Numbered from the stretch's first letter, positions 34,060 through 50,523 are shown. The stretch: DNA of 64,000 nucleotides from IMGVR_UViG_3300013094_000017:186001-250000, one strand, 5' to 3'. Notes: generated by a model from the sequence alone, not told the origin. Program-made: numbers and translations.

Positions 34060-34085
34060 CAAAAAAAAGGGCACCTAAGTGCCCC
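34060..34085 (-). terminator. Rho-independent terminator closing the early cassette array
   Basis: - strand GGGGCAC-TTAG-GTGCCC plus T9. Confidence 0.85.
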
Positions 34086-34100
34086 CTAATGACCTCAGCT

Positions 34101-34451
34101 CTAATCTAATCTACTGCCACCATAGGCCTTCAAGCCTAGCTCGTTAACTAATACTTCAGCGTAGGCATACGCACCCGCTTCCTTAACGCTAACGCTCTGC
34201 GTAGGATAGCCTGCTGGATCCCACAACTGTAAGCCTCCATTGTATGCTTTACGGAAGCCTACACTGGCTAACCACTTGCCCAACTTGCTGTTCGTGCGCA
34301 CATCGTATACAGTGACCCAACCAAAGCCACATGCATCACGCTCGCCTACCTTGCTGTACATGTCAGCAGCCGCTAGCTTGCTTACTGCTAGAGCCTTGGC
34401 TAATACTTGTTCTACGAAGTCTTGCTTTAGTTCAGTTGCTTTTAGTTCCAT
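34101..34451 (-). CDS. Early hypothetical protein
   Basis: Cassette leader; CGFGWV...TQSVSVKEAGAYAYA. Confidence 0.7.
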   Translation of the reverse strand: MELKATELKQDFVEQVLAKALAVSKLAAADMYSKVGERDACGFGWVTVYDVRTNSKLGKWLASVGFRKAYNGGLQLWDPAGYPTQSVSVKEAGAYAYAEVLVNELGLKAYGGSRLD

Positions 34452-34515
34452 TTTGTTTCTCCGTTGTGTTAGTGTATACGTAGTATAATATCAAACCTGC
34501 CAGCTGTCAACTACT

Positions 34516-34830
34516 TTATGCCAACTCCTTAAGCTCACGCTGTAGCTTCTTCAATTGCTTCTGTAAGTCCTTAAGCTTCACAGCCGCGCTAATATCAATC
34601 GCATGCTTAAACTTCTTATTCTCCCAATCTCTGTCACTAACAATAGCATCCACATACATGTCAACAATAGTCTTTAGTGTAGCGTTCCACTTAGCACCGT
34701 CTAAGCACGTGTCCCAACATTCAATCTCATACTTGTCTGCAATGTAGTCATCAAGCTCACTTAAGCGTTCAATCACTTCTGTTTCAATGTCGTTAGCTAC
34801 ATCGTCAATTGTTTTAATTTTCTTAGCCAT
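34516..34830 (-). CDS. Early hypothetical protein
   Basis: Cassette leader. Confidence 0.65.
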   Translation of the reverse strand: MAKKIKTIDDVANDIETEVIERLSELDDYIADKYEIECWDTCLDGAKWNATLKTIVDMYVDAIVSDRDWENKKFKHAIDISAAVKLKDLQKQLKKLQRELKELA

Positions 34831-34891
34831 TTTGTTTACCTCGTTGCGTTAGTGTCTGTGTAGTATACTATCGATTAAACCCTAAGTCAAC

Positions 34892-35086
34892 CTATTTCTT
34901 TACTCGAACAGTGAATAGACTGCCTAGTAGGGCTGTGGCTAACCAAGTGTTGAATGTGTAGGGAATAGCCAATGCGGGGAATAAAGTATCCAATGACCAT
35001 ATGGTTAAGATAGGTCCTAGAATGACTGCTAAGATACCTAATACTACTAGGCCTAGTACGCCAAAGGCTTTGGTGGATGATTTCAT
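34892..35086 (-). CDS. Early small membrane protein
   Basis: Two hydrophobic segments. Confidence 0.6.
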   Translation of the reverse strand: MKSSTKAFGVLGLVVLGILAVILGPILTIWSLDTLFPALAIPYTFNTWLATALLGSLFTVRVKK

Positions 35087-35385
35087 TAGTTTAGATCCTT
35101 ATGATAGAATTGGTCCATTTGGTATAGGCTCACACAGGTTAGTACGAGGATACCTAATAGTCCCAATGTTGAGGGTGTGTTAACTTCATATGCTATAAGA
35201 GCAAGTAGCAAGGCCTTGCTGGTATATATCTTAATCATTTAATTTCTCCTAGTGTTGTAATGCATGAGTGCATTATATAGTCTAAGCGGCCTTATGTCAA
35301 CTTCGGATGGCACGGATGCCTAGGGTGAGGATGAGGCCAAACACTAGGATCACTGCTATAGGTATTAGGGCTACTAGGTTGTACA

Positions 35386-35649
35386 TTATAATACTCCTTC
35401 TGATTCTAGTTCAGCTACTGCTTCGTTGAATAGGCTTTCTAGGTCGCGGACTTGGTTGGCCACTCTAATGTCTTTCCGACGCTTACGGAGTGCTGTGCCT
35501 TTCTGATACATTAAAGGGTGATGCAGTTTACAGTATACTGCACCATCCACTAGGTCCTTTGATCCACACTCGGTTGGATTATCGCCAAGCCATTGACATC
35601 CGAGTGCTCTAACCAGGGCTAGATCAAGTACCGGATTATTTGTTTTCAT
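35386..35649 (-). CDS. Early Zn-finger protein
   Basis: CQWLG...CG......YC..H (GcrA C-terminal-like finger). Confidence 0.6.
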   Translation of the reverse strand: MKTNNPVLDLALVRALGCQWLGDNPTECGSKDLVDGAVYCKLHHPLMYQKGTALRKRRKDIRVANQVRDLESLFNEAVAELESEGVL

Positions 35650-35872
35650 TGTTAACCATCTTCTTTACTAGTTTTTCAGTATCGATGCCCATATCTTTTA
35701 ATATGATCAGCATGACTGTTGATGTTTCTACTCGGCCGGCAGTGCGTTCCTGGTGTGCAATGATCACCAAGAGGGCAATCAAACTCCACCACTGCCAACC
35801 CCAACCTAAGTTGAGGGTGGCCAGTACTAGACCGTAGGTTAGATATAATGCTACGTTTAATATCTTATCCAT
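35636..35872 (-). CDS. Early small membrane protein
   Basis: Hydrophobic N-half; coupled. Confidence 0.55.
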   Translation of the reverse strand: MDKILNVALYLTYGLVLATLNLGWGWQWWSLIALLVIIAHQERTAGRVETSTVMLIILKDMGIDTEKLVKKMVNNENK

Positions 35873-36732
35873 TAGGCACGACGCATACAGGTTGTTGAAG
35901 CCATAGCCTGCCAGTTGCTGGGAAAGCTCTTGCGCAGGTCAGCTACCTTAAGTACCATGCGTAGGCTTAGCTCTCTGAGCTTGGCCGCGTTCACAGTGAT
36001 GAAGTTAACGATCTCATCTTTGGTCACCTGTTCAAACTCATAGTCATCTAACATACCTTCATTAACAATCTGCTTGATGCGCAGGATCTTCTCGCGGTCT
36101 GTGTCCATCTCTAAGTCGATGTAATGGCAACGACTTTCGAGCGCATCTAAGTGGTCCTTCAATCGTTTGCTTTTCACATGATGGAATTTAATATTAGTGA
36201 TAAAGATCGCCGCACCTTTGAACTCAAACCTGTCTGGAATGCCTTCACTGCGTAGCATACGGCTGTCAGTGTTCCAAGCAATGTATCGCTTCTTGCTACT
36301 ATCTAATGCGCCCTTGAGGATGTTAAGGCTAAGGTCTTCCATAAGAATACTGTCGCAGTCATCGAACACTATAACGTTGCCTTCGTCTGCGAATTCGTAT
36401 AACTTAGCATATAGTCCGAGGCTACTCATCGCACCTTTGACCACTTCGTATTTAGGTTTCTTATTACCTAACGTGTTGAATAGATCGTCCTTGCTGAGTA
36501 CTGCCTCAACACCAAAGCTCTTACCTACACCTGGGGGACCACTTACGATCATAGCACGTACATCGCCATGCTTGACTGCTTTGGTCATGTCAGTTAAGAT
36601 ACTGAAGCGAGCACTTAGGCGTTCAATGATCTCTTCGTCAGTCTCTAAAGCCACTGATAGTTCTAAGGCCTTAATCGCATCGGTATCAAACTCTAGTACT
36701 GATACGCCACCACTCTTATTTGCTTTTGCCAT
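35872..36732 (-). CDS. AAA+ ATPase
   Basis: SGPPGVGKS Walker A, IVFDDCD Walker B, IFITN, LESRC. Confidence 0.85.
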   Translation of the reverse strand: MAKANKSGGVSVLEFDTDAIKALELSVALETDEEIIERLSARFSILTDMTKAVKHGDVRAMIVSGPPGVGKSFGVEAVLSKDDLFNTLGNKKPKYEVVKGAMSSLGLYAKLYEFADEGNVIVFDDCDSILMEDLSLNILKGALDSSKKRYIAWNTDSRMLRSEGIPDRFEFKGAAIFITNIKFHHVKSKRLKDHLDALESRCHYIDLEMDTDREKILRIKQIVNEGMLDDYEFEQVTKDEIVNFITVNAAKLRELSLRMVLKVADLRKSFPSNWQAMASTTCMRRA

Positions 36733-36994
36733 TTGCTTTCCTTGTTTTGTTAGTGTAAGTGTGTATTATAACACCTAGCCTAGGCCTTGTCAACCACTTC
36801 TTTTTCAACAGTGGCGCCTGTATACTTCTGGCCTGCCTTGTGAATCAATCCCCAAGGATAGTATGTAATAGTTCCGCCCGAAGCAGAAGTTTTTGTAGTG
36901 CCTGGTGTGTTCATGTTATACTCCGAATACCAATTTGCCTAATAAGAACCCTGCAAAAAACAGGGCCACCCAACCTACTAAACGATCTCCCCAG

Positions 36995-37201
36995 TTAGGC
37001 TCCATAGTATTCTGCTCCTTCATCATACTCGTCGGCAGTGTCTTCGTCTTCTTCAAAGAAGCCTTCCAACTCAGTAGCGCAGAAGTCCTCGACAGCCGCT
37101 TCGCTCATTGTGGTCATTAAGCTGGTTGCCAACCACATTGGGTCAACGATGCCTTCTACCATTAGATCATAAAGCCTGTTAGTGTATTTGCGTGTTGCCA
37201 T
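36995..37201 (-). CDS. Early acidic hypothetical protein
   Basis: Cassette leader. Confidence 0.65.
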   Translation of the reverse strand: MATRKYTNRLYDLMVEGIVDPMWLATSLMTTMSEAAVEDFCATELEGFFEEDEDTADEYDEGAEYYGA

Positions 37202-37261
37202 TTTGTTTCTCCGTTGTGTTAGTGTAAGTGCATTATAGCAGGAGTTAGCCCAAATGTCAAC

Positions 37262-37417
37262 CTATGTTCTTGCTATGATAGCCTGTGAGTAGATGATAGA
37301 TCCCAGAACCTCTGCGGAGGAGGTCACTCCACCTTGTAGCTCCCAACCATTGGCCAAGGCTGCACGTATTTCCTTTTCAACCTCTGCTAAGGTACCTGTG
37401 ACAATCTTGTATCGCAT
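37262..37417 (-). CDS. DUF1737-like small protein
   Basis: Manual translation MRYKIVTGTLAEVEKEIRAALANGWELQGGV...YSQAII. Confidence 0.6.
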   Translation of the reverse strand: MRYKIVTGTLAEVEKEIRAALANGWELQGGVTSSAEVLGSIIYSQAIIART

Positions 37418-37418
37418 A

Positions 37419-37676
37419 TTAACCTTTCTCTGCTAGTTCCTGACACCAGACGCATCGTGTGCAGCCTAGGATGGCCTGTCTGCGAGGTTCCGGAATGGCC
37501 TCACCACAGTCCTCACACTCGGTTAGACTTGGTTGTGCCGCTTGCTCTGCTAGTCGACGCTGAACATCAGCTACCGCGTTCATGTTTAGGTGGATGGCGT
37601 GAATCTGGCCTAACTCTTCTTCGGCTCTGTTATCCATGAAGTTATCTTCTTGGTGCAATACATCTTTAGTTGTCAT
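37419..37676 (-). CDS. DksA/TraR-family C4 Zn-finger protein
   Basis: CEDCGEAIPEPRRQAILGCTRCVWCQ. Confidence 0.85.
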   Translation of the reverse strand: MTTKDVLHQEDNFMDNRAEEELGQIHAIHLNMNAVADVQRRLAEQAAQPSLTECEDCGEAIPEPRRQAILGCTRCVWCQELAEKG

Positions 37677-37812
37677 TAGATTTGCCTTTGTGTTTGGTCT
37701 TGCGGGTGAACTTGGTACGGTCCTTCTCTACCTTTGCTTTGAAAGGAAGATCCTTGTTGAATAGTGCATAGTGTCTGCGTACTGTCATTTTAATCTTTCT
37801 GCTCGTTTTCAT
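37666..37812 (-). CDS. Basic 48-aa protein, ArfA-like
   Basis: Manual translation ...LFNKDLPFKAKVEKDRTKFTRKTKHK; own promoter. Confidence 0.5.
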   Translation of the reverse strand: MKTSRKIKMTVRRHYALFNKDLPFKAKVEKDRTKFTRKTKHKGKSNDN

Positions 37813-37996
37813 AGTGTAAGTATTATACTACCTTAAACCTCTGATGTCAACCCCTAAATGAGGTCAAGAGAAAGCCCGCAACATGCAGGCTTTTTCTTAG
37901 GTCTAGCTATATGTTAGGTTTAGTAACTTTACATACCATGCCCTTTCTTCAAAATTGATTTAAGTGTTATCTCTTACTAAACTACATTATACTATC

Positions 37997-38440
37997 TTAA
38001 ACGAATCCTGTCAATGCTCGTTGGTATCGTTCCTCTTGGTGTCGTGCCCAACTCATCTCTAGGCCATGCTGTATACGCTCCCTATCAAACCATTCAGCTA
38101 GGGCAGGAAACTCGATTAACGGTAGTTCTATACCATAGTCATCTTCGAACCAATCTGTTCTGATCTTCCAGGTCTCTGGTACCAAGTTTCGATGCACACC
38201 GATGTTGGTTTCGATCATTAATCGTTTCCATTTGCGAACCAATGTGTTTATGGTATTGGTCCAATAGGTATTGGCCCATGTGTTTGGTTGTGTCCTGGAC
38301 AATGCTTCTCGAGCTTGGTCTAATCGAATGCCCAAGGCATCCAACTCATACTCAGTGGGGAATAGGTTCTTAGGTTCCCAATCGCCTAGATCTAAGGGCA
38401 ATACCACTGCCTCTGGCTCTTTAGGTTTAAACCAACGCAT
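37997..38440 (-). CDS. Early hypothetical protein
   Basis: 147-aa ORF. Confidence 0.6.
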   Translation of the reverse strand: MRWFKPKEPEAVVLPLDLGDWEPKNLFPTEYELDALGIRLDQAREALSRTQPNTWANTYWTNTINTLVRKWKRLMIETNIGVHRNLVPETWKIRTDWFEDDYGIELPLIEFPALAEWFDRERIQHGLEMSWARHQEERYQRALTGFV

Positions 38441-38711
38441 CTTCTAACTCCTCGGGAATGTCATTTAGGACCTTGCGCTTCTTAGTCTCTGCTATCAAGC
38501 AGGCCTGCACTTCTGCATTGCCGTTGGCAAAGCCTATGGCGAATAGGAATGCCAGTGCATCCTCTTTGGTGCTGGGATACTTAAGTTCCACTAGGTCGAT
38601 GTCCTTGTGTCCGCATTTGATTAGGATCTTTACTCGGTGATAACTGTTGGCATATCGAACTTTGAGTTTACCGTCGAGTCTACTAACGCCTGCGTGTGTG
38701 TATGATTTCAT
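38427..38711 (-). CDS. Early hypothetical protein
   Basis: YTHAGVSRLDGKLKVRYAN...IDLVEL. Confidence 0.65.
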   Translation of the reverse strand: MKSYTHAGVSRLDGKLKVRYANSYHRVKILIKCGHKDIDLVELKYPSTKEDALAFLFAIGFANGNAEVQACLIAETKKRKVLNDIPEELEDALV

Positions 38712-38766
38712 AGGTCTTTCCTGTTCTATCAGTGTATAGCTAGTATACTACCATTAGCCCAAAATG

Positions 38767-38940
38767 TCAATAGACTTCTTTGGTGATATAGAATACTTCC
38801 GCGGGATACTTCTCTTTGAACTCATCCGTGCCTGTGAACTTGTTCAGTTCAGTAGCATTGAAGAATACCTTATGCAATGCTGTCTTATGTGTCTTACGAT
38901 CACTGACCGTTAGATAAACTGATGTGGCGCGTCCTGCCAT
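38767..38940 (-). CDS. Early hypothetical protein (57 aa)
   Basis: Manual translation MAGRATSVYLTV...; its TGA stop lies inside the next -35 box. Confidence 0.6.
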   Translation of the reverse strand: MAGRATSVYLTVSDRKTHKTALHKVFFNATELNKFTGTDEFKEKYPAEVFYITKEVY

Positions 38941-38941
38941 G

Positions 38942-39139
38942 TTAGACCTCTTCTATTGAATGTGGAGGAAAGCTGAACTTCAAACTGTTCCTGCCTGTGT
39001 TGGCTGCCTCTGCACGTTTGAATGCTTCAAGTGCGCCTTCTTTAGTATCTGCTTCTACGACGATGTGATCAGTCTCAGTGTGGTTAAATTCATCCCATCC
39101 CGGCATCTCATATTCGTAGCGTACAATGTATCTTGCCAT
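38942..39139 (-). CDS. Early hypothetical protein
   Basis: Start at cassette ATG 39139. Confidence 0.65.
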   Translation of the reverse strand: MARYIVRYEYEMPGWDEFNHTETDHIVVEADTKEGALEAFKRAEAANTGRNSLKFSFPPHSIEEV

Positions 39140-39199
39140 TTTGTTTCTCCGTTGCGCTAGTGTATGTGTTATTATAGCATACACTAGCCCAAAAGTCAA

Positions 39200-39457
39200 C
39201 TAGTATTGCACCACACGCACAATCTGCGTTAAGTAAGCCCAACGCGGCTCACCTTTAGTGTCTGTGTAGTCACAACCTGCACGTCCATTCTTAATGTCTG
39301 CTTCTACGTTTTCTAACGTAACAGTTTCTGCAGGCTCACTGCCAAACCCACTGCGTATAACTACCACGCTACCTGCACGTACATCATCAATGTCAACGCC
39401 AGTGCCAGCAATGCCACTGCGTCTAATTGCGCTAATTAAATCTAATGTGTTGCTCAT
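39200..39457 (-). CDS. Early hypothetical (SH3-like) protein
   Basis: Start at cassette ATG 39457. Confidence 0.65.
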   Translation of the reverse strand: MSNTLDLISAIRRSGIAGTGVDIDDVRAGSVVVIRSGFGSEPAETVTLENVEADIKNGRAGCDYTDTKGEPRWAYLTQIVRVVQY

Positions 39458-39519
39458 TTTGTTTCTCCGTTTTGTTAGTGTAAGTGCATTATAGCGCATT
39501 TCTGCGCTATTGTCAACCA

Positions 39520-39729
39520 TTATTTTTCTTGCATTACAATGTTGTTAGTGCGTAATTGTTCTGCAGCCTGCGCAAATGCACGCACAACATCTTCTTCGTT
39601 GTTATAATCGCTACTAATAAAGCTAGCGTTACGTTGTGTTAGCGTGTCGTATGTAAAGCCTACAATAAGTCTAAACAGACCCTTGTTTGTTTTTAATACT
39701 TTTGCGTGTGCTAGTGTGTTTGTTTGCAT
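39520..39729 (-). CDS. Early hypothetical protein
   Basis: Cassette leader. Confidence 0.65.
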   Translation of the reverse strand: MQTNTLAHAKVLKTNKGLFRLIVGFTYDTLTQRNASFISSDYNNEEDVVRAFAQAAEQLRTNNIVMQEK

Positions 39730-39794
39730 TTGTGTTGCTCCGTTTTGTTAGTGTAAGTGCATTATAGCACCCACACTAACATTTGTCAACCTCT

Positions 39795-40064
39795 TTATGC
39801 CTGTACGCAGGTACCTCTGACCATGTGAAGGCTTCTGCGCCCAGTGCGTGTGCTGGCAGTTAACCCATGTGCATTTAACAATGCTTCCGTCCTTCCTGCT
39901 ACCTTCTCGCCTAGCCCGTGATATACCACCATGCCCACATAGCGTTTACTTTCCCAGGTGCGGTGGTTTGCGCTGTCAGTCCATGCCATGCCTAGCTCTG
40001 CGCCCAATTGTTTGGCCGCGGTTCTTACTGCATTACGGAATTCTAATGTGTTTGCTGTTTGCAT
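39795..40064 (-). CDS. Early hypothetical protein
   Basis: Cassette leader. Confidence 0.65.
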   Translation of the reverse strand: MQTANTLEFRNAVRTAAKQLGAELGMAWTDSANHRTWESKRYVGMVVYHGLGEKVAGRTEALLNAHGLTASTRTGRRSLHMVRGTCVQA

Positions 40065-40122
40065 TTGTTTCTCCATTTGTTTAGTGTAAGTGTATTATAA
40101 CACAGGTATTACCAAAAGTCAA

Positions 40123-40377
40123 CTATCTTTTGGGCCATATGGCGTCTAGAGTCTCTACCTTCTGGCGATTCATTTCCTGGGTGATCTGTTCGTCCTTACC
40201 ATATACTCGTTCGCGGTACATGCGTTCGAAGCAACGACCCAGACCTTCTGCACTCTTATTACCCCAGGAGGTTTCGTAGCGACCATCGTCATTGGTCTTT
40301 AGATCTAACATCTGGGCTATCTCTAGCCCAAATGCTTCTGCTTCTGCGGATGTAGAAAATTTACTTACGATCATCAC
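40123..40377 (-). CDS. Early hypothetical protein
   Basis: AGGAG RBS; GRYETSWGNKS. Confidence 0.6.
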   Translation of the reverse strand: MMIVSKFSTSAEAEAFGLEIAQMLDLKTNDDGRYETSWGNKSAEGLGRCFERMYRERVYGKDEQITQEMNRQKVETLDAIWPKR

Positions 40378-40382
40378 TGCTC

Positions 40383-40706
40383 CTATGCTAGGTTATAACG
40401 ATAGATGATGCCCTGTGGAGTAACCTTCTTAACAAAGCCCAGCTCTGTCCAGTCCTCTTCCAACCAAGCCAATGTCTTAGGATTCTTAAGCCATCCTCCA
40501 TCAATCTTAATGCTCACACCCTTCTTACCATATGCTTCATAAATTTTGCCAGTGGTAATCTCGCCTAATGCCACCATCATCGCATCAACTTGACGGCGTA
40601 GAGAAAATGGATAGTGACTCTTGTTGTTTAGATTGCGTTGACGAGCGTCTTGTGATGCCCACCATTTGTTTGGTGCTTCTTCAGTGTTGAGTAATAGTGT
40701 TTTCAT
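40383..40706 (-). CDS. Early hypothetical protein
   Basis: Cassette leader. Confidence 0.65.
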   Translation of the reverse strand: MKTLLLNTEEAPNKWWASQDARQRNLNNKSHYPFSLRRQVDAMMVALGEITTGKIYEAYGKKGVSIKIDGGWLKNPKTLAWLEEDWTELGFVKKVTPQGIIYRYNLA

Positions 40707-40878
40707 TTTGTTGCTCCGTTGTGTTAGTGTAAGTGCATTATAGCATAGGTATTACCTGTTGTCAACCCCTATCTTATGCCAAGAGAAAGGGCTGTGAACA
40801 ACATTATGTCCACAGCCCTTATGATAGGGTGGGCTTACCGTAAGCCACTACCTCACAAACCACACCCCACGGAGCAAC

Positions 40879-41319
40879 CTATGCAAAGTCTTTGTTATAT
40901 TGATTACGCTTTGCCTCACACTTGTCTTTAAACTCTGCCCAAGTGCCTGAAAAAATTACGTTGTCGTTGTTAGTGCCAACAGTGACAACCTCAACCTTGT
41001 TCTTGTAAACATGGTACTCATATTCCTGCCAATTGTCCACACCTGGCTTAGGTGGATACAAGTAGAACTGCCCTGGACCATCTTTAAAGTGTGCTACCAA
41101 CTGCGCGGCCAAACATCCCATACCATTGGCAACCTTTTCTGTCTTAGCACCCAAACCATTTACAATTGCAATTGGGCTAAGGAATTCAGCAAGCTCTAAA
41201 CCATGTCCTTCCATGTAGCCATCATATTGGCGATATAACTTAATGATTGGCGTGTGCTTCTCTTTGCCATTCTTTTGAGTGTAAGTGTCATAAACCCATG
41301 TTAAACTGCGTGTACCCAT
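40879..41319 (-). CDS. Early conserved phage protein (MGTRS... type)
   Basis: MGTRSLT..YRQYDGY..GHG..L, NGMGCLAAQLVAHFK. Confidence 0.7.
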   Translation of the reverse strand: MGTRSLTWVYDTYTQKNGKEKHTPIIKLYRQYDGYMEGHGLELAEFLSPIAIVNGLGAKTEKVANGMGCLAAQLVAHFKDGPGQFYLYPPKPGVDNWQEYEYHVYKNKVEVVTVGTNNDNVIFSGTWAEFKDKCEAKRNQYNKDFA

Positions 41320-41400
41320 TTTGCTTCTCCGTGTTGTTAGTGTAAGTGCATTATAGCACCCCCTAGGGGTTTTGTCAACCCCTTTAAGCGGGGTCTTACT

Positions 41401-41835
41401 CTAGGAGTCTTGTTCTTCTTCCTCGTACTCAGGTTCATCGTACGGTGGGTCAGTGTCAATAACAACCTTACCGAATGTAAGCTCAGCACCATCACTGCCT
41501 ACTGCAAACTGCTCTTCGAAGTCTACTACGTTGCCACCTTCCATCCATAGGCTGTCCGAAGTATCGTTGATGTCACTAAGTAGGATACACCCAATGCCAC
41601 CTGCATCCACAGGATACTCACGGCCTTGCTCATCCTCATAGTTACCATCACCGTGGGCGGTACTGAAGTAAGCAAAGCGAACACCATTGGCTAATTTGAA
41701 TACACCTTGTGCACCGCGCCAGTTGTCTTGTCCCTTAGGAAAGAACAGCTCACACGCTTCTTGCCACTGTGGGTGCATTACATAGCACAAGTCACCGATC
41801 CAATACTTTCCTGCTGGCATAGTTCCGTAATTCAT
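41401..41835 (-). CDS. Early hypothetical protein
   Basis: YWIGDLCYV...TAHGDG.Y...VDAGGIG. Confidence 0.7.
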   Translation of the reverse strand: MNYGTMPAGKYWIGDLCYVMHPQWQEACELFFPKGQDNWRGAQGVFKLANGVRFAYFSTAHGDGNYEDEQGREYPVDAGGIGCILLSDINDTSDSLWMEGGNVVDFEEQFAVGSDGAELTFGKVVIDTDPPYDEPEYEEEEQDS

Positions 41836-41897
41836 TTTGTTTCTCCGTTGTGTTAGTGTAAGTACATTATAACATCGGTATTACCACTTGTCAACCC

Positions 41898-42113
41898 CTA
41901 GATAGCATCAGCCTCTTCAACGTTATACTGCGTGATGTCGTCCTCAAGGATCTCAATAGCCGTCACACGCACTTCGTTATCAGTGGTCATACCGCCGAGG
42001 ACATTCTTGTAGTCCAAGAGTTCTTGTGCATACTCAAGAGCCTGGTCTCGGTTATCGAACGGTTCGTCGTGTGTGATCTCAGCACGCACTGTGGTGTAGA
42101 TGACTGTCTTCAT
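41898..42113 (-). CDS. Early hypothetical protein
   Basis: Coupled ORF. Confidence 0.6.
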   Translation of the reverse strand: MKTVIYTTVRAEITHDEPFDNRDQALEYAQELLDYKNVLGGMTTDNEVRVTAIEILEDDITQYNVEEADAI

Positions 42114-42316
42114 TCTGCTGTCTCCATTGACATCTCTTGCAAGCGGTCATACGCATTAACAAAGTCCTCGCAAAGCAGACGCATACGATGCATAGCCTGC
42201 TCTTCGCTGTCGCTTAGGCCAATGTCTTCAAAGTCGTAACCGTCTTCTAGAACATTAACGCAATCGCGCAAATCACCTAAGGTGTTTTCGAACCTGCAAT
42301 AACTCATATTAGCCAT
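42110..42316 (-). CDS. Early hypothetical protein
   Basis: MANMSYCRFENT..DL; cassette leader. Confidence 0.7.
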   Translation of the reverse strand: MANMSYCRFENTLGDLRDCVNVLEDGYDFEDIGLSDSEEQAMHRMRLLCEDFVNAYDRLQEMSMETAE

Positions 42317-42378
42317 TTTGTTTCTCCGTTGTGTTAGTGTAAGTGCATTATAGCAGGTAAAACCTGCTATGTCAACCC

Positions 42379-42579
42379 CTAATTAGCAAACTCTTCTATG
42401 CAATCTAATACTTCTTCTAACTGCATAATAACATCTTCGATGTTGTTGTGGATAGTGTAGCAGACATCCTCGTCTTCAGGAAGTGCATCTTTGTAGACTG
42501 CAAATGCTTTCTGTTGCAAGCGGTTTGCAGTGTGAAGTGCTTCGATAGCGGCTTCTAGGTGTTGTTTGGCTAGTGACAT
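42379..42579 (-). CDS. Early hypothetical protein
   Basis: Cassette leader. Confidence 0.65.
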   Translation of the reverse strand: MSLAKQHLEAAIEALHTANRLQQKAFAVYKDALPEDEDVCYTIHNNIEDVIMQLEEVLDCIEEFAN

Positions 42580-42634
42580 AATGTTTCTCCGTTGTGTTAG
42601 TGTAAAGCTATTATAGCACCAATGGTAAAACCTG

Positions 42635-42856
42635 TCAACCGATATAGTGAACTATTAATCCAACTACGCCTGTGAGCAGCATCACACCGTTCACAACGAT
42701 TAAGCTGGCCTTGCGCCATTCTATAGCTATAGCAAACCATATAGCACCGCCTACGCACAGCAACAGGGGCCCTTGTGGGTAGTATCCTAAGCTGTTAACT
42801 GCTGTGCCAACGATTAAGATCGTTGTAGCTATCCATTCTAATATTAAGATTCTCAT
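42635..42856 (-). CDS. Small 3-TM membrane protein
   Basis: Start ATG 42856; three hydrophobic helices. Confidence 0.6.
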   Translation of the reverse strand: MRILILEWIATTILIVGTAVNSLGYYPQGPLLLCVGGAIWFAIAIEWRKASLIVVNGVMLLTGVVGLIVHYIG

Positions 42857-43437
42857 ATGTCTAAAGTACTTCCTAATCCTTTGTGATAGAACAAATGTTG
42901 TCCCACCTTGGTTATATACTGCGTACGGTCTGCCCAAGCCGGCGATACATATGATGCATGATACATTAAAGCCTGCTGTAGGGGTCTTACACGTACCTTA
43001 TCCACCAGCACGCTATGCGCAATCATTTGACTCTCAGCCCACAACACACCCTTGGGCTTGTCCAACTTCTTCTTAAGTGTCCACGAGAACTGTGCCTTTG
43101 CGTGGACTACCTTGCACACACTGTTACCCCAATGGCCCGTCTTGAGTCTGTTTAAGGTTACCTGTGCAACTGCGTATTTGCCCTGCACCGGCTCCACCCC
43201 AGCTTCGTAGTATACATTCTCTGCTAGACAAGTCAAGTCATTTTTTGTGTAATGGACATTCTCATCTGTCTGCACAAGAAAAGCCTTGATCTCACGGACC
43301 TCATTGTGGACCTCAGTGATCTCACGTTGCTGGAACGACAGCAATGCTACCACTGCCGTTCCAGTTGCCGCTATGAGTAAATTACTCTTCGTCAACACTG
43401 TCTGCTTCCCACATCTCTTGGTTTTCGGAGATGGCAA
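42853..43437 (-). CDS. Cell wall hydrolase SleB/Hydrolase_2
   Basis: CLAENVYYEAG, AVAQVTLNR, QFSWT, ALMYHA, VGQHLFY; exact start uncertain. Confidence 0.85.
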   Translation of the reverse strand: MPSPKTKRCGKQTVLTKSNLLIAATGTAVVALLSFQQREITEVHNEVREIKAFLVQTDENVHYTKNDLTCLAENVYYEAGVEPVQGKYAVAQVTLNRLKTGHWGNSVCKVVHAKAQFSWTLKKKLDKPKGVLWAESQMIAHSVLVDKVRVRPLQQALMYHASYVSPAWADRTQYITKVGQHLFYHKGLGSTLDI

Positions 43438-43954
43438 AAGTATCGTCTAACTCTTGCGGTAGTTGATCACGAGCGCCTTGTGCATCACCCCAGTCTTGGT
43501 AGTAGTCATCATTGCCGTCTTGATAGATGCCAGCGAACTGCATACCACCTTCATAGTAGTAGCCAAGCACATCAAAGCCCGCTTCTTCCAAGAACGCATA
43601 AGCGCCTACTGGCGGAGCCCAAGCACTGTCAAAGTGCAGGGTGATGCTGTGGAAGCCGTCAATGGTCTCATTGATCTCGTAGTATTCATCCTCACTGCCA
43701 ACATCCCACTTGGTTCCCCAATTGCTCACGCACCAGTCATACCAAGTGCTGTAGCCATATTTCTCAAGGTTGGCTTCATATAGGGCCTGTAGTTCAGCAT
43801 CATCAGTACCTGGAGCACTGGTGATCATCAAAGCCTCGGGCACAGGAGCGAACTCCTGTAGCAATACCCCACGCTTAAAGGCCTCTTCGACACGCTGGAT
43901 CTGACCAGCATCTTTGTGAGTAAGTGTTACGATATTCTGGCACCAGTTTGGAAT
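43382..43954 (-). CDS. YubB/DUF1281-like ferredoxin-fold protein; ATT start
   Basis: (I)PNWCQNIV...WYDWCVSNWGTKWD...FDSAWAPP; in-frame TAG 4 codons upstream of ATT. Confidence 0.75.
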   Translation of the reverse strand: MPNWCQNIVTLTHKDAGQIQRVEEAFKRGVLLQEFAPVPEALMITSAPGTDDAELQALYEANLEKYGYSTWYDWCVSNWGTKWDVGSEDEYYEINETIDGFHSITLHFDSAWAPPVGAYAFLEEAGFDVLGYYYEGGMQFAGIYQDGNDDYYQDWGDAQGARDQLPQELDDTFAISENQEMWEADSVDEE

Positions 43955-44022
43955 TTTGGGTTCCTACCTTTCTTAATTTGTTAGTGTAAGTGCATTATAG
44001 CACCTTTCGGTGCTATGGTCAA

Positions 44023-44277
44023 CTAGCATTCGTAAAGTTTAACTCCAGGATCTAACTGCTTCAACTCATTCGCCGCCTGTGTTAGAAACTTAAAATTCCT
44101 ACGAACAGTGGCCGCATCTAGCTCGCCATCACAGGTCAAGTTCTCTGGTGATAGTTTGCCATCGATGATATCTGCAATGTGTTGTCGGTCTTGGGCAGTG
44201 GCCAACGACAGAGGTTTATTCCCCCATATGGCACGCCATTGGTTTTCTGCTTGGATAAAGGACTTTAGTGTTTTCAT
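44023..44277 (-). CDS. Early hypothetical protein
   Basis: LSPENLTCDGE motif; cassette leader. Confidence 0.7.
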   Translation of the reverse strand: MKTLKSFIQAENQWRAIWGNKPLSLATAQDRQHIADIIDGKLSPENLTCDGELDAATVRRNFKFLTQAANELKQLDPGVKLYEC

Positions 44278-44343
44278 TACGTTTCTCCGTGTTGTTAGTG
44301 TAAGTGCATTATAGCACCTACACTAATCTCTGTCAACCTCTAT

Positions 44344-44616
44344 CTAGGCCATCTCTACCATGTTAGCAGGCACACGCCAAGCACCTTGTGGTGTATCGAT
44401 AACGATGTTCTTAATAGCGATCTTCTTAACGGTGCCTCGAATGGTTTGACGGCTACGGCTTGAAGTAAACTGGACAGCGTCACCTACACGGAATGTTCTT
44501 AGGTTCAATCGAGCGTTACGGCTTCGGACATACTTGATTGACTCTACGATTGAGTTGATATCCGCATCAGTCAATTCTGAAGTTAGGATTAGTTCATTGA
44601 TTTTGGCTACTGACAT
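44344..44616 (-). CDS. Early SH3-like protein
   Basis: FRVGDAVQF...GTVKKI...WRVP. Confidence 0.65.
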   Translation of the reverse strand: MSVAKINELILTSELTDADINSIVESIKYVRSRNARLNLRTFRVGDAVQFTSSRSRQTIRGTVKKIAIKNIVIDTPQGAWRVPANMVEMA

Positions 44617-44669
44617 AGTCTGCTCCTTAAGTGTTTAAGTGTGTAGTATAACATCGGTATTACCAAATG

Positions 44670-44951
44670 TCAACCTAAAAAGAATTCAATCTCTTTAATA
44701 AGATCTTCCTTCACTGGCTTGTCTTCGTCGCCATGCACATACGCGGCGAACTCCTCTTCATGCCAGCGTTCAAATGTGCTAGTCATTAGCCAATTGAATA
44801 TCTTTTCTGCTGACTCCTGCTTAACCTTAGCGCGGAACGCTTCCAATGCCTTAGCACTGTCGCCTTCTGTCCAGTAGGTAAGTCCGTCTTGCTCAACTAG
44901 CAGGCCTGCTTCGATTGCTAGTTGTTCTGTTGCGGAAAAGGTTGTGCTCAT
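44670..44951 (-). CDS. Early hypothetical protein
   Basis: AAGGAG RBS. Confidence 0.6.
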   Translation of the reverse strand: MSTTFSATEQLAIEAGLLVEQDGLTYWTEGDSAKALEAFRAKVKQESAEKIFNWLMTSTFERWHEEEFAAYVHGDEDKPVKEDLIKEIEFFLG

Positions 44952-45075
44952 GCCATTACTCCTTGTTTAACCTTGCGCCAATCCCAACGTGCCTGTGTGT
45001 ATGCACGACGGCTAAGTGTAAAGCCTGGGCAGTTCTTGCAGGCCCAAGCTACGAAGTGAACTTGCTCTACGTTAC

Positions 45076-45231
45076 TCATAAGCCACAAGCCTCGTAGAAG
45101 CGTCCATAGTCAAAGCGACTGTTCATTGCCTTAGCAACATCTGCAAAAGCCTTAGCCGCTTGCTTGCGTGCATCCAAGTCTGCGATACCTGCTAGTTCTT
45201 TTGCCATTGCAATAAAGTGTTTACGTGACAT
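45076..45231 (-). CDS. Early 51-aa protein
   Basis: Manual translation MSRKHFIAMA...NSRFDYGRFYEACGL; cassette leader. Confidence 0.65.
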   Translation of the reverse strand: MSRKHFIAMAKELAGIADLDARKQAAKAFADVAKAMNSRFDYGRFYEACGL

Positions 45232-45284
45232 CTTGTGTTTCTCCGTTTTGTTAGTGTGTAGCTATTATAACACCGGTTTTACCT

Positions 45285-45530
45285 TTAGTCAACCTCAATT
45301 AACTTTAATTCGTAGAACATATCCTGCGCCAAGTCTACGCTGACAAAGTCAATAGCATACTCTTCGCCACTCTCTTCACCTGTACCGTAGAAGCGACCTG
45401 TACTGAGATCCTCTCCCAGATCTAATAAGTCCTGGTCAGTATCCCAATAGTCAATGCGGATGCCCTCGCAATTGAATGGAACATACACTGCGGCACGGCC
45501 TACGATCTCTTTAACCTTATCTAAGCTCAT
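45285..45530 (-). CDS. Early acidic hypothetical protein
   Basis: Coupled ORF. Confidence 0.6.
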   Translation of the reverse strand: MSLDKVKEIVGRAAVYVPFNCEGIRIDYWDTDQDLLDLGEDLSTGRFYGTGEESGEEYAIDFVSVDLAQDMFYELKLIEVD

Positions 45531-45913
45531 ACCTTCTCCTTTGCAACAATCTTAGGTTCACGTCCACTGCCATCGCTGATGTAGCCTAACACTAAGGTCT
45601 CCATAGCCCGCTTAGCCTCTTGCACGGCTTCCCAAGCAAGGTCTTCTGCGGTGCCGTCTTTGAATACTTCCATGGCATCCTCGTACAAGAAGCCACCTAC
45701 ATAAGCATCACCTAGCTCGATGTCCTTGTAGTAGGCCACAGCGCGAAGCATGAACCAATCTAATTCATACGCATCAATCTTGCGACAAAGGTCTTCAACG
45801 TCTGTTACAGTGTCATCAAAGCAGTCTCTGGGGCTAATATCTTCCCAGGACTTTTCGATCTTAACAGTAAAGCCATCCATTTCAAGCTGGCCTAGTGTTT
45901 CCCAATGGCGCAT
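45527..45913 (-). CDS. Early hypothetical protein
   Basis: Cassette leader. Confidence 0.65.
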   Translation of the reverse strand: MRHWETLGQLEMDGFTVKIEKSWEDISPRDCFDDTVTDVEDLCRKIDAYELDWFMLRAVAYYKDIELGDAYVGGFLYEDAMEVFKDGTAEDLAWEAVQEAKRAMETLVLGYISDGSGREPKIVAKEKV

Positions 45914-45967
45914 ATCATTCTCCGTTTGTTTAGTTTAAGTGCATTATAGCACAGGTATTACCAAAGG

Positions 45968-46129
45968 TCAATCCCAAAATTTATTAATAATCTCTTCTGC
46001 TTCCCTCATAGCACCATCAAAGTCACCAGCACCTAAGCAGAAGATCTCTCCGCTGTAGTGTAAGCACCAGCAGTTCAAGTGTAGATCAAATTCTACATCG
46101 TAACCAGTTTCTAATACATGTACAGCCAT
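45968..46129 (-). CDS. Early small protein
   Basis: AAGGAG RBS before ATG 46129. Confidence 0.55.
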   Translation of the reverse strand: MAVHVLETGYDVEFDLHLNCWCLHYSGEIFCLGAGDFDGAMREAEEIINKFWD

Positions 46130-46139
46130 AATATTCTCC

Positions 46140-46307
46140 TTATAAACTTGCGGTATCAATTTCTACGTCCGCTAGGACAATAGTAACATCCCACGGCTTC
46201 TTAGCACCTAGTAGGCCTGCTGCGAGTCTTTGTGCGGCAAAGCTAGACTCTGCTTTCACTTCAATCTTCTTGCTCTTGTAGAACGCTATATACATATATG
46301 TTCGCAT
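46140..46307 (-). CDS. Early 55-aa protein
   Basis: Manual translation MRTYVYIAFYKSKKIEVKAESSFAAQ...; cassette leader. Confidence 0.6.
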   Translation of the reverse strand: MRTYMYIAFYKSKKIEVKAESSFAAQRLAAGLLGAKKPWDVTIVLADVEIDTASL

Positions 46308-46447
46308 AGTGTACTCCTTGTTGTTAGTGTGTAAACATTATAGCGTAGGTTTTTCCATTTGTCAAGCATTATATTGGTAATATTTTGGTTGACAGGTATT
46401 ACCAGCGATGCTATACTACGTATACACTAACAACACGGAGAACTAAA

Positions 46448-46642
46448 ATGGGTACACCACTAATTGGAATGACGCTTGCAGATGCCTGCAGTATTGTTAA
46501 GGCCTATGCTGATCTACAAGGCTTACCGTTCTTAGAAGGTTTGATGGAAATGGATGCAGGCTATGATGACTTGGACCTTGAGGATCAAAGGGCCTGCAAC
46601 ATGGTATTGAAAGCTGGTCGAGAGATGTTTGCCCCAGTGTAG
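46448..46642 (+). CDS. Early hypothetical protein (inverted cassette)
   Basis: TTGACA-17-TATACT plus ACACTAACAACACGGAGAACTAAAATG. Confidence 0.65.
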   Translation: MGTPLIGMTLADACSIVKAYADLQGLPFLEGLMEMDAGYDDLDLEDQRACNMVLKAGREMFAPV

Positions 46643-46856: not shown

Positions 46857-46933
46857 TGGTGCTCCGTCAGGGATTCGAACCCTGCCTCCCACGTTATGAG
46901 CATGGTACTCTCTACCTAGTGAGTTACCAGAGC
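46857..46933 (-). tRNA. tRNA with CAU anticodon (elongator Met or Ile2)
   Basis: GCTCTGG acceptor, ACTC/GAGT D stem, CCATG-CTCATAA-CGTGG, CAGGG-TTCGAAT-CCCTG, encoded ACCA. G1-C72 pair and no 3GC anticodon stem, so not initiator-type. sigma70 promoter upstream. Confidence 0.9.
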
Positions 46934-46985
46934 AAAAACTTATACATTAATAATACTATATCTATTCAGTTTTGTCAACTGTTAG

Positions 46986-48144: not shown

Positions 48145-48680
48145 GCAGCGGGGTCACTACATATATAGTGTTATACTATAAGATACATTATACACTATAT
48201 ACACTAGTAAGTCAATGTATACTGTATATAGTATAGAATATAAGCTATTAAGATATAGTGAGTATAGTATATAGTATAAGAGATCTATATATACTATACA
48301 GCGGGGTCACTACATATACAGTAATATAGTATACAGTAATACAGTATACTGTATATACGGTGGGACCTATCGATATATAAGAGGGTATTAGGCAAGGTCA
48401 GAACCGCTAGGCCAAGGTCTAAATATGGTCAAGAATGGTGGCCAAATGGTGGATTCATGGGAGGTTTTTCTGTGAGATTATGGTAAAATCACTATAGAAA
48501 CTGTGGGAAAATTGCTGCAAAATTTTTTGAAGGTGGGTGGGGAGAGAGGCTATGCTAGAATACTTCCCCAATGGTTCACCTATTTTCTCATACCTTGTTC
48601 ACCTATTTTCTCATACCTTGTTCACCTATTTTCTCATACCCTGTTCTTACTATTCTCACAGTTCTCATGCAGCGGGGTCA
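48145..48680. repeat. Dispersed (G)CAGCGGGGTCA(CTACATATA) repeat x3
   Basis: Copies at 48145-48165, 48299-48318, 48669-48680. Confidence 0.85.
48574..48642. repeat. 23-bp tandem repeat x3 (GTTCACCTATTTTCTCATACCTT)
   Basis: Read directly; third copy has one substitution. Confidence 0.9.
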
Positions 48681-50137: not shown

Positions 50138-50523
50138 TGTGGGATAAGATTCAGGACTGGTATCTAACCTGGCGCACTGGCCGACCTCGCCAGGTACGTG
50201 AGTTTGAAGCATGGGCAGAAGTTACAATAGTCAAGCGTGCTAACACAGCCGAGGCTATGTTTAGGAACTTCAAGTATGTGTTTACAGTTGACTACAACAA
50301 GTTCTTTTTTGATGCTGGCATGTTTATGGAGTTAGACCCAGGAACTAAACCATATATGTTTCCACAGCGTGAGTTAGGTGATAACTTAGTCTATGCTCAC
50401 CTGCGTGGAGAGGAAATGCCAATTGGCCTGTTTCTTATAACTGACTTAGGTGATGAAGATAGACTTTATGTTGCCACAAACAACGGCAAGGATGCTACTA
50501 TGATAGCACTATTATACGGTTGA
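50137..50523 (+). CDS. LKW-motif family protein (divergent)
   Basis: Ends TNNGKDATMIALLYG. Confidence 0.6.
   Translation: MWDKIQDWYLTWRTGRPRQVREFEAWAEVTIVKRANTAEAMFRNFKYVFTVDYNKFFFDAGMFMELDPGTKPYMFPQRELGDNLVYAHLRGEEMPIGLFLITDLGDEDRLYVATNNGKDATMIALLYG

What the first reader, a model, noticed from the sequence alone, without database searches (positions are those of the whole stretch)
34449..46450. 12-kb early gene cassette array: about 23 copies of one promoter-leader unit, each abutting the previous stop codon
Seen: about 37 small - strand genes, most preceded by GTTGAC-N17/18-TATAAT-GCACTTACACTAACACAACGGAGAAACAAAATG. The upstream stop codon often overlaps or lies within about 5 nt of the -35 box (e.g. 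38767, 39200, 44023). Established: T4-type PeSL elements mediate modular shuffling of early genes, and SPO1 clusters host-takeover genes behind repeated strong promoters. Inference: the 30-nt transcribed leader is more conserved than promoter function needs. It could be a recombination hotspot for cassette exchange and a shared regulatory target, for example RegB-like GGAG cleavage, a RegA-like repressor or CsrA-type ACGGA binding, making the array a switchable regulon.
Basis: partly seen in the sequence, partly recalled or inferred. Interest (0 to 1): 0.75.

Follow-up and report, generated by a model that had tools for sequence, protein, structure and literature searches.

The report
Repeated early promoter-leader gene cassettes
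A giant lake-water phage puts about 38 unrelated small genes behind 23 copies of one strong promoter plus short leader. Related phages have gained, lost, swapped and reordered these cassettes, often breaking inside the repeats, as already described for T4-type phages.

Summary
Window 34066-46365 (- strand) holds 23 near-consensus sigma-70 promoters, all with a 17-nt spacer. In 20 of them a roughly 30-nt leader runs into a GGAG ribosome site and an ATG. One more unit points the other way at 46389. In 18 of 23 units the upstream stop codon overlaps the promoter or lies within 7 nt of its -35 box. The leader occurs only in this 12 kb of the 259-kb contig. Thirty other consensus promoters in the genome lack it. 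The 38 array proteins are unrelated to each other and are mostly of unknown function.

The contig is an uncultivated lake-water jumbo myovirus. Its nearest cultured relative is Pseudomonas phage PA5oct (terminase 55% identical). Related contigs carry the same kind of array, but each has its own leader version and a shuffled gene order. Their cassette-sized indels and replacements break inside the units 3.5 times more often than chance predicts. Leaders are more alike within the window's genome than between orthologous genes of different genomes.

The best reading is an analogue of the T4-type PeSL cassette: a portable expression module kept uniform by recombination. It is not a strict PeSL, because only 4 of 23 units have a stem-loop. 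No RegB, RegA or CsrA homologue was found. The proposed regulatory switch remains untested.

The parts
34066..46365 (-). Whole - strand early array: 23 promoter units, 38 small ORFs and 3 terminators
46305..46365 (-). Unit P46365 (-35 box to ATG), 55-aa ORF; the most upstream unit, back to back with P46389
45911..45971 (-). Unit P45971; the upstream stop TGA lies inside TTGACC; the spacer holds GGTAATACC
45229..45292 (-). Unit P45292; spacer GGTAAAACC; the upstream stop TAA overlaps the end of the -35 box
44614..44673 (-). Unit P44673; TGA stop inside TTGACA; variant leader ending AAGGAGC
44275..44336 (-). Unit P44336; shares 36 identical nt with P41378
43952..44022 (-). Unit P44022; 8-bp stem-loop across the spacer and -10 box; truncated leader; ATT where homologues have ATG
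42577..42638 (-). Unit P42638; TGA stop inside TTGACA; spacer GGTTTTACC
42314..42375 (-). Unit P42375; 9-bp stem-loop ATAGCAGGT/ACCTGCTAT; shares 46 identical nt with P37260
41833..41894 (-). Unit P41894; spacer GGTAATACC
41317..41395 (-). Unit P41378 with GGGG/CCCC hairpins around the -35 box (41359-41395); the hairpin is also present in relative L094
40781..40818 (-). Internal terminator-like hairpin plus T-run after the 146-aa gene; conserved in L094
40704..40765 (-). Unit P40765; spacer GGTAATACC
40062..40122 (-). Unit P40122; the upstream TAG abuts the -35 box; spacer GGTAATACC
39727..39789 (-). Unit P39789; shares 31 identical nt with P39516; one contig of run X3 joins the two and skips 273 bp
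39455..39516 (-). Unit P39516; 8-bp stem-loop ATAGCGCA/TGCGCTAT
39137..39199 (-). Unit P39199; the upstream TAG abuts the -35 box; spacer subfamily TTTGGGCTA
38709..38770 (-). Unit P38770; TGA stop inside TTGACA; diverged leader
37866..38014 (-). Unit P38014: a perfect promoter inside the 3' end of the 147-aa gene, followed by about 110-120 nt without an ORF and a terminator (37866-37891)
37777..37850 (-). Unit P37850; shortened leader; 37-aa ORF (DUF7230)
37199..37260 (-). Unit P37260; exact consensus leader
36730..36793 (-). Unit P36793, in front of the 286-aa NrdC.10-like AAA protein, the most conserved gene of the array
35236..35300 (-). Unit P35300; the most diverged leader
34828..34890 (-). 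Unit P34890
34449..34510 (-). Unit P34510; the last unit; 116-aa ORF at 34101-34451
34066..34087 (-). Intrinsic terminator (9-bp stem plus T-run) that closes the array
46389..46450 (+). Divergent unit of the same family on the + strand, with a 64-aa ORF at 46448-46642; 24 nt separate it from P46365

Best explanation

Each unit is a compact, portable expression module. It has a near-consensus sigma-70 promoter: GG-TTGACA, a 17-nt spacer, often an extended -10 TG, then TATAAT. Transcription probably starts about 7 nt after the -10 box. That would give a 5'UTR of about 24 nt that is A/C-rich, G-poor and unstructured, ending in GGAG, an A-rich 8-nt spacer and ATG. Each part of the leader has an ordinary job: initial transcribed sequence, ribosome-binding site and spacer.

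The leader's near-identity across 20 unrelated genes is best explained in two parts. Unrelated ORFs have repeatedly been placed behind copies of one module. The copies are then kept alike within a genome by homologous recombination or gene conversion, that is, concerted evolution.

The same 25-46-nt identical tracts would give the phage's own UvsX-type recombination machinery short patches of homology. Cassettes can then be deleted, inserted, replaced and reordered without breaking genes or their expression. This is the mechanism proposed for PeSL elements of T4-type phages.

Shown here: the anatomy, the confinement to this region, the lack of paralogy, the unstructured initiation regions, the genome-specific leader versions, the shuffled gene order, and the enrichment of breakpoints at units in relatives.

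Inferred: early timing, the start site, recombination as the cause, and any circular intermediates.
For: Confinement to the array:
- The genome has 53 consensus promoters. Twenty-three are in the array (4.6% of the genome) and 21 of those carry the leader. Only 2 of the 30 promoters elsewhere match it, and only loosely.

The genes:
- The 38 array proteins show no similarity to each other at blastp E<=0.01.
- Most have no Pfam or PHROG function.

Translation initiation regions:
- The 5'UTR plus the first 36 nt folds at a mean of -3.0 kcal/mol, against -11.0 for random 60-mers of the same strand.

Homology available for recombination:
- 41 unit pairs share at least 20 identical nt, 7 pairs share at least 30, and one pair shares 46.
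- Spacers fall into subfamilies (GGTAATACC, TTTGGGCTA, TTAGTGTRGGTGC), which shows that units were copied.
- A UvsX-like recombinase, an SSB and helicases are encoded in the window.

Relatives:
- Fifty-five IMG/VR loci found through the NrdC.10-like protein, not through the motif, mostly carry arrays of 3-17 such units, each genome with its own leader version.
- Leader identity is 0.75 within the window, 0.61-0.76 between orthologous genes of different genomes, and 0.60-0.68 between non-orthologous genes of different genomes.
- Gene order is shuffled in all 21 relatives examined, while the conserved genes flanking the array keep their order.

Cassette indels and replacements at units:
- L094 against the window.
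- L019 against L022, L050 against L051 and L058 against L059.
- 54 of 140 breakpoints lie in units that make up 11% of the sequence.

One contig of run X3 joins 39464 to 39738. It skips exactly one 273-bp cassette across a 31-nt identity.

PeSL anatomy and recombination are described in PMC2839356. PA5oct uses the host RNA polymerase and TTGAC/TATAATA promoters (PMC7318152).
Against: - No transcript data exist for this phage. Early timing, start sites and promoter activity are therefore inferred.
- The two near-identical assemblies of the same phage (L037 at 99.98% and L093 at 99.5%) show no cassette differences. Turnover is thus not seen at the shortest timescale.
- The X3 joint has exactly 31 nt of shared sequence, which I take from my own knowledge to be the assembler's word size, and the depth of the skipped part is 0. 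It may be an assembly artefact. The junction was not found in IMG/VR.
- 61% of indel breakpoints between relatives are not in recognised units. The units are preferred sites, not the only ones.
- Concerted evolution and genome-specific selection by a co-evolving factor predict the same within-genome and between-genome pattern.
Confidence: 0.7

Rival explanations
1. The leader, the GGTWWWACC palindrome in the promoter spacer, or both are specific binding or cleavage sites for a phage-encoded factor. That factor would switch the whole array on or off together, like a RegB-type endonuclease, a RegA-type translational repressor or an early-promoter repressor. Under this reading the within-genome uniformity reflects co-evolution with the factor. 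This does not exclude the recombination role.
For: - Conservation is sequence-specific (ACACTAAC), not only compositional, and is absent from 30 other consensus promoters in the same genome.
- Each related genome has its own uniform leader version.
- GGTWWWACC occurs 17 times in 259 kb. Nine are in array spacers and one is in the spacer of P50520. GGTAAAACC or GGTTTTACC recurs in the spacers of many relatives.
- A DksA/TraR-type zinc-finger protein is encoded in the array.
Against: - No RegB, RegA or CsrA homologue was found in the contig, although the contig is only about 73% complete.
- Every part of the leader already has a generic role: initial transcribed sequence, ribosome site and spacer.
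- The palindrome is present in only 9 of 24 units.
- The candidate small RNA encoded in the array is not complementary to the leader.
- No RNA or binding data are available.
Confidence: 0.2
2. The similarity is pure convergence or purifying selection for a single optimal promoter and leader in this host. Recombination plays no part in keeping the copies alike or in moving cassettes.
For: - The hexamers, the extended -10 TG, the GGAG site and the A-rich spacer are all textbook optima.
- The initiation regions are unstructured.
Against: - Identity extends into parts with no known optimum: spacer subfamilies, and 46-nt and 36-nt identical tracts that run from the spacer into the first codons.
- Related phages use different leader versions.
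- Thirty other strong promoters in this genome use unrelated leaders.
- Indel junctions in relatives are flanked by direct repeats of the unit.
Confidence: 0.07
3. The array arose by recent tandem duplication of a single gene with its promoter. The repeats would then be leftovers of gene duplication.
For: The units recur on one strand with a period of about 260-650 bp.
Against: - No pair of the 38 proteins is similar at E<=0.01.
- Orthologues of individual cassettes occur in other phages in other orders.
Confidence: 0.02

Closest known systems
PeSL (promoter-early stem-loop) cassettes of T4-type phages RB49/phi1, T4/PST and KVP40/nt-1 (Arbiol et al. 2010, PMC2839356; Comeau et al. 2014, PMC4122927)
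   Same: - Repeated sigma-70-consensus early promoters are concentrated in a region of small ORFs of unknown function.
- The conserved unit runs from the upstream stop codon through the -35 and -10 boxes to the ribosome site and ATG.
- Related genomes differ by insertion, deletion and replacement of cassettes, with crossovers inside the units, including between the -10 box and the ATG.
- A T4-type recombination system (UvsX, SSB) is encoded by the phage.
   Different: - Only 4 of 23 units have a convincing stem-loop, so the terminator half of a PeSL is mostly missing. Three ordinary terminators do that job instead.
[quoted passage not shown]
- The transcribed leader is much more uniform.
- The phage is not T4-like. 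It is a distant relative of PA5oct.
- Mini-circles have not been shown.
Host-takeover module of Bacillus phage SPO1 (about 24 small genes behind about a dozen strong early promoters with strong ribosome sites; recalled from my own knowledge of Stewart et al. 1998, not checked here)
   Same: About 12 kb is packed with small genes of unknown function. Many strong host-sigma promoters each drive 1-3 genes, and the ribosome-binding sites are strong and uniform.
   Different: - The hosts belong to different groups: SPO1 infects Bacillus, while this phage's host is unknown.
- As far as I know, no conserved leader of this length has been described for SPO1, and no cassette shuffling at its promoters.
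- SPO1's module lies in the terminal redundancy. That could not be tested for this incomplete linear contig.
Early region of Pseudomonas phage PA5oct (Arenbergviridae), the nearest cultured relative
   Same: - It shares the NrdC.10-like AAA protein (48% aa identity), and a cell-wall hydrolase lies among small hypothetical genes.
- It depends on the host RNA polymerase, with TTGAC/TATAATA promoters.
   Different: The homologous 20-kb region of PA5oct has no repeated promoter-leader array.
T4 RegB and RegA control of early mRNAs
   Same: The early genes carry GGAG ribosome sites. These are the sequence that RegB cleaves in T4 (my own knowledge).
   Different: No RegB (PF10715) or RegA (PF01818) homologue is present in the contig, and there are no RNA data.

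Membership tests
PeSL cassettes (T4-type phages) | Repeated sigma-70-consensus early promoter concentrated in a plastic region of small ORFs | tested here: met
   The array holds 23 of the genome's 53 consensus promoters in 4.6% of its length. The ORFs are small and mostly without known function.
PeSL cassettes (T4-type phages) | The unit spans the upstream stop codon, the promoter, the Shine-Dalgarno site and the start codon of the next ORF | tested here: met
   In 18 of 23 units the stop overlaps the promoter or lies within 7 nt of the -35 box. In 20 of 23 units GGAG and ATG follow 28-33 nt after the -10 box.
PeSL cassettes (T4-type phages) | Stable stem-loop (terminator or attenuator) in or next to the promoter | tested here: not met
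   Only P44022, P42375, P41378 and P39516 fold clearly better than controls with the spacer and upstream flank shuffled (z <= -3.2). The other 19 do not.
PeSL cassettes (T4-type phages) | AT-rich tract upstream of the -35 box | tested here: inconclusive
   AT content from -25 to -3 is 62%, against 55% for the array as a whole (sd 10-13%). The two bases before the -35 box are mostly GG.
PeSL cassettes (T4-type phages) | Related genomes differ by cassette insertion, deletion or replacement with crossovers inside the units | tested here: met
   L094 against the window. L019 against L022, L050 against L051 and L058 against L059. 54 of 140 breakpoints lie in units that make up 11% of the sequence.
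PeSL cassettes (T4-type phages) | Excised mini-circles formed by recombination between neighbouring units | not testable with these tools
   Only assembled contigs were available. One X3 contig lacks exactly one cassette, but this may be an artefact of the assembler's 31-nt word size. No circle junction could be sought.
PeSL cassettes (T4-type phages) | The host genome is a T4-like myovirus | tested here: not met
   The best terminase matches are PA5oct-type jumbo phages at 55% aa identity. Some T4-like core functions are present, including UvsX and an NrdC.10 homologue.
RegB/RegA-controlled early regulon (T4) | The phage encodes a RegB endoribonuclease or a RegA translational repressor | tested here: not met
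   PF10715 and PF01818 gave no match at E<=1 in the 259-kb contig. The contig is estimated to be 73% complete.
RegB/RegA-controlled early regulon (T4) | Cleavage or binding at the GGAG of early mRNAs | not testable with these tools
   No RNA run was listed for this phage.
CsrA-type regulation | A CsrA homologue encoded by the phage | tested here: not met
   PF02599 gave no match. A host CsrA cannot be assessed because the host is unknown.
Integron-like cassette array | A site-specific recombinase that acts on the repeats | tested here: not met
   No tyrosine recombinase (PF00589) or serine recombinase (PF00239) is present in the contig.

The most novel reading that the evidence does not exclude
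The uniform leader, the GGTWWWACC spacer palindrome, or both are recognition sites for a dedicated phage-encoded protein that co-evolves with each genome's version of the unit. That protein could be a regulator that shuts off the whole early array at once. It could instead be a helper that targets recombination to the units. In the second case this would be an actively mobilised cassette system, comparable to an integron without an integrase, rather than a passive by-product of homologous recombination.
Probability: 0.12. Interest if true: 0.7.

Novelty: new variant of a known kind. Interest (0 to 1): 0.4.

Why it matters
- It extends promoter-cassette shuffling, so far described for T4-type phages, to a widespread uncultivated lineage of freshwater jumbo phages. 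It does so with evidence taken directly from metagenomes.
- The stem-loop half of the PeSL is largely missing here. The homology patch may therefore be the essential part of such elements, and the terminator may not be.
- The units flag a set of about 38 probable host-takeover genes of unknown function. They also offer a compact strong promoter and leader module that could be tested as an expression part.
- The lake time series that holds this phage in many samples could be used to measure how fast cassettes turn over in nature.

Tried and rejected
- DNA searches of the array against 50,697 phage records, near and distant, found nothing.
- The two near-identical assemblies (L037, L093) showed no cassette-level differences, so they could not test shuffling.
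- RegB, RegA, CsrA, tyrosine recombinase and serine recombinase profiles gave no hit in the contig.
- I tested whether the roughly 110-nt non-coding transcript from P38014 could pair with the common leader. Its duplex energy was -6.8, against -8.4 for shuffles, so I rejected the idea.
- Tandem gene duplication is rejected, because the array proteins are not paralogous.
- A stem-loop in every unit is rejected. Only 4 of 23 have one.
- Most loose ends in the laid contigs proved to be cross-mapping of other units of the same genome (P46389, P44673, P37260), not variants.
- The recombinant junction seen in run X3 was not found in IMG/VR.
- No RNA run was listed.
- The homologous region of PA5oct has no such array.
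- Rfam found nothing in the array apart from the neighbouring tRNA.

Full report
**What is there**

The window is bases 186001-250000 of a single 259,419-bp viral contig from a lake-water metagenome. CheckV estimates it to be 73% complete. It encodes a 1,112-aa tail sheath, a large terminase, a UvsX-like recombinase, an SSB and DnaB-type helicases. The best terminase matches among 50,697 phage records are the PA5oct-type Pseudomonas jumbo phages, at 55% amino-acid identity. No phage record matches the array at the DNA level.

**Checking the observation**

A scan for TTGAC-N16-18-TATAAT finds 23 units on the - strand between 46365 and 34510, all with a 17-nt spacer. One more unit lies on the + strand at 46389, back to back with the first.

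- Fourteen units match the two hexamers 12 of 12. Fifteen have the extended -10 TG. Nineteen have G just before the -35 box.
- In 20 units the -10 box is followed after 28-33 nt by an ATG that opens an ORF. The consensus leader is GCACTTACACTAACA(C/A)AACGGAGAAACAAA.
- Information content is 1.8 bits per position in the hexamers, 0.84 in the first 22 transcribed-side bases, 0.47 in the spacer and 0.35 upstream.
- In 18 of 23 units the stop codon of the preceding gene overlaps the promoter or lies within 7 nt of the -35 box. Four times it is the TGA inside TTGACA/C itself.
- I count 38 - strand ORFs, with a median length of 82 aa.
- Three terminator-like hairpins punctuate the block, at 40781-40818, 37866-37891 and 34066-34087.

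There are small corrections: the spacer is always 17 nt, three units are atypical, and the block ends at 34066.

**Is the leader special?**

The genome has 53 promoters that match the consensus at 11 of 12 positions or better with a 17-nt spacer. Twenty-three lie in the array, which is 4.6% of the genome, and 21 of these carry the ACACTAA leader motif. Of the 30 elsewhere, only 2 match it, and only loosely. Strong promoters in this phage therefore work with unrelated leaders, and the leader is a property of the array.

The 38 proteins are not paralogues. Only a few have any family match:

- a SleB-type cell-wall hydrolase
- a DUF6552 membrane protein
- a DksA/TraR zinc finger
- DUF1737
- DUF7230
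- an NrdC.10-like AAA protein

**What the leader does on its face**

If transcription starts about 7 nt after the -10 box (inference), the mRNA begins ACACUAAC and has a 5'UTR of about 24 nt. That UTR has no G before the GGAG and an A-rich 8-nt spacer. The 5'UTR plus the first 36 coding bases folds at a mean of -3.0 kcal/mol. Random 60-mers of the same strand fold at -11.0 (sd 4.7). Shuffling the UTR alone gives -4.1, so composition explains most of the openness. The leader therefore looks like an optimised initial transcribed sequence plus ribosome-binding site.

**Relatives**

An exact-pattern scan of IMG/VR with the -10 box plus the leader returned 36 loci. Many hold several units of the same kind.

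An independent search through the NrdC.10-like protein returned 55 loci at 49-100% identity. Most of these also hold arrays of 3-17 consensus promoters with short leaders, but each genome has its own leader version.

Leader identity was compared in three ways:

| Comparison | Leader identity |
|---|---|
| Units within the window | 0.75 |
| Units in front of orthologous genes, window against a relative | 0.61-0.76 |
| Units in front of non-orthologous genes, window against a relative | 0.60-0.68 |

This pattern, alike within a genome and not by gene, is the signature of concerted evolution. It fits equally well with co-evolution with a genome-specific factor.

Spacer subfamilies exist within the window. 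Some pairs share identical tracts of up to 46 nt that run from the spacer into the first codons. Both observations show that units have been copied.

**Shuffling**

Numbering the window's genes 1-38, relatives show orders such as 8-3-9-10-21-31-25-38-32 (L013) and 5-15-25-36-32-34-17-9-10-11-38-18 (L041). Most cassettes have no counterpart at all. The conserved genes that flank the array keep their order in relatives.

L094 is 73-81% identical to the window at the DNA level. It runs from the homologue of gene 13 straight through a unit into the homologue of gene 17 and its terminator. A second unit then leads into the homologues of genes 22 and 23. It therefore lacks two and then three of the window's cassettes, and the homology ends in or next to promoter units.

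Among relatives of each other:

- L022 has a 256-bp cassette (a unit plus a 65-aa ORF) that L019 lacks. It is flanked by a direct repeat of the promoter.
- L051 has a roughly 385-bp cassette that L050 lacks, with a 60-nt repeat at the junction.
- L058 and L059 differ by a replaced ORF, bounded on the left by the ribosome site and on the right by the next -35 box.

Over 12 related pairs, 54 of 140 breakpoints of indels of at least 100 nt fall in recognised units, which occupy 11% of the sequence. In 17 of 35 events at least two breakpoints are in units. Units are preferred breakpoints, but not the only ones.

**The same phage in nature**

Twenty-four DNA runs hold this sequence, and no RNA run was listed.

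Contigs from four runs were laid on 38501-44500. One contig of run X3 joins 39464 to 39738. It skips exactly the 273 bp between the leaders of P39789 and P39516, across 31 shared bases. X3 has no depth in the skipped part.

This is what a recombinational deletion of one cassette would look like. However, 31 nt is, from my own knowledge, the assembler's word size and the coverage is low. The joint may therefore be an artefact, and the junction was not found in IMG/VR. The other loose ends were units of the same genome mapping onto each other.

The two near-identical assemblies of this phage (99.98% and 99.5%) have no cassette differences.

**Comparison with the known**

The PeSL elements of T4-type phages consist of the upstream stop codon, an AT-rich tract, a sigma-70 early promoter, a stem-loop, the ribosome site and the start codon. 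They mediate indels and replacements between close relatives. They also form mini-circles, with crossovers seen between the -10 box and the ATG (PMC2839356; PMC4122927).

The present units share everything except the following:

- The stem-loop is present in only 4 of 23 units.
- The upstream tract is only weakly AT-rich.
- The phage is not T4-like.
- Mini-circles could not be tested.

I therefore describe the array as working like PeSLs, but I do not file it as a strict member.

PA5oct, the nearest cultured relative, uses the host polymerase with TTGAC/TATAATA promoters (PMC7318152). It has no such array in the homologous region.

**The regulatory idea**

No RegB, RegA or CsrA homologue, and no site-specific recombinase, is encoded in the contig. 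A candidate small RNA in the array is not complementary to the leader.

One feature could be a protein-binding site. The palindrome GGT(A/T)3ACC occurs 17 times in the genome. Nine of these are in array spacers and one is in another promoter spacer. It recurs in the spacers of relatives. This keeps a regulon-type reading alive at low probability.

**Verdict**

The feature is real and striking. The most likely explanation is a known mechanism in a new lineage, with a somewhat different element anatomy. The regulatory-target idea is neither supported nor excluded.

Noticed in passing
window 37866-38014 (- strand): A perfect TTGACA-N17-TATAAT promoter (P38014) lies inside the 3' end of the 147-aa gene. 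It is followed by about 110-120 nt without an ORF and then a terminator hairpin. This may be a small RNA. It has no Rfam match, its fold z-score is -2.0, and it is not complementary to the common leader.
   Followed up: partly
window 43952-43954 (- strand): The 190-aa gene behind P44022 has ATT where six homologues have ATG (homologues start MPNWC..., the window reads IPNWC...). No ATG, GTG or TTG is nearby, and its leader has a different ribosome site (AAGGTAGGA). This is either a rare ATT start or a weakened gene. The region is unchanged in the two near-identical assemblies L037 and L093.
   Followed up: partly
window 46857-46933 (- strand): A tRNA-Met (CAT) lies just upstream of the array. 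It has its own near-consensus promoter at 46978, which lacks the array leader.
   Followed up: partly
window 42635-43437 (- strand); L172 15118-15684: A SleB-type cell-wall hydrolase with an N-terminal hydrophobic stretch and a 73-aa DUF6552 membrane protein sit inside the presumed early array. PA5oct also has a putative cell-wall hydrolase near its NrdC.10 homologue.
   Followed up: partly
window 48270-48660: The 99.5%-identical assembly L093 differs here by 9-nt and 15-nt deletions and a cluster of substitutions. The tract is rich in TAGTGTATA-type repeats and lies next to two more consensus promoters (48215 on the - strand, 48854 on the + strand). It looks like a second, different repeat-rich variable spot.
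   Followed up: no
window 50520-50548 (+ strand): A consensus-like promoter outside the array has the same GGTAATACC palindrome in its spacer, but an unrelated leader.
   Followed up: partly
window 37419-37676 (- strand): An 85-aa protein with a DksA/TraR C4 zinc finger lies in the array. It may be an RNA-polymerase-binding regulator.
   Followed up: no
L020 (IMGVR_UViG_3300021131_000163), whole locus: This related contig has 20-22 units in 11.5 kb. In it the promoter spacer is itself nearly invariant (TTGACAATTAATTCATATTCGGCTAYAAT; 0.84 mean conservation). That is a more extreme homogenisation than in the window.
   Followed up: partly
L037 (contig 3300022602_000207), end at window 34025: A 99.98%-identical contig from another sample ends about 40 nt beyond the terminator that closes the array. 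Either the assembly broke there or the neighbouring sequence differs in that sample.
   Followed up: no
window 37666-37779 (- strand): A 37-aa, very basic ORF behind P37850 matches DUF7230 just below the Pfam cut-off (24.9 bits against 27).
   Followed up: no
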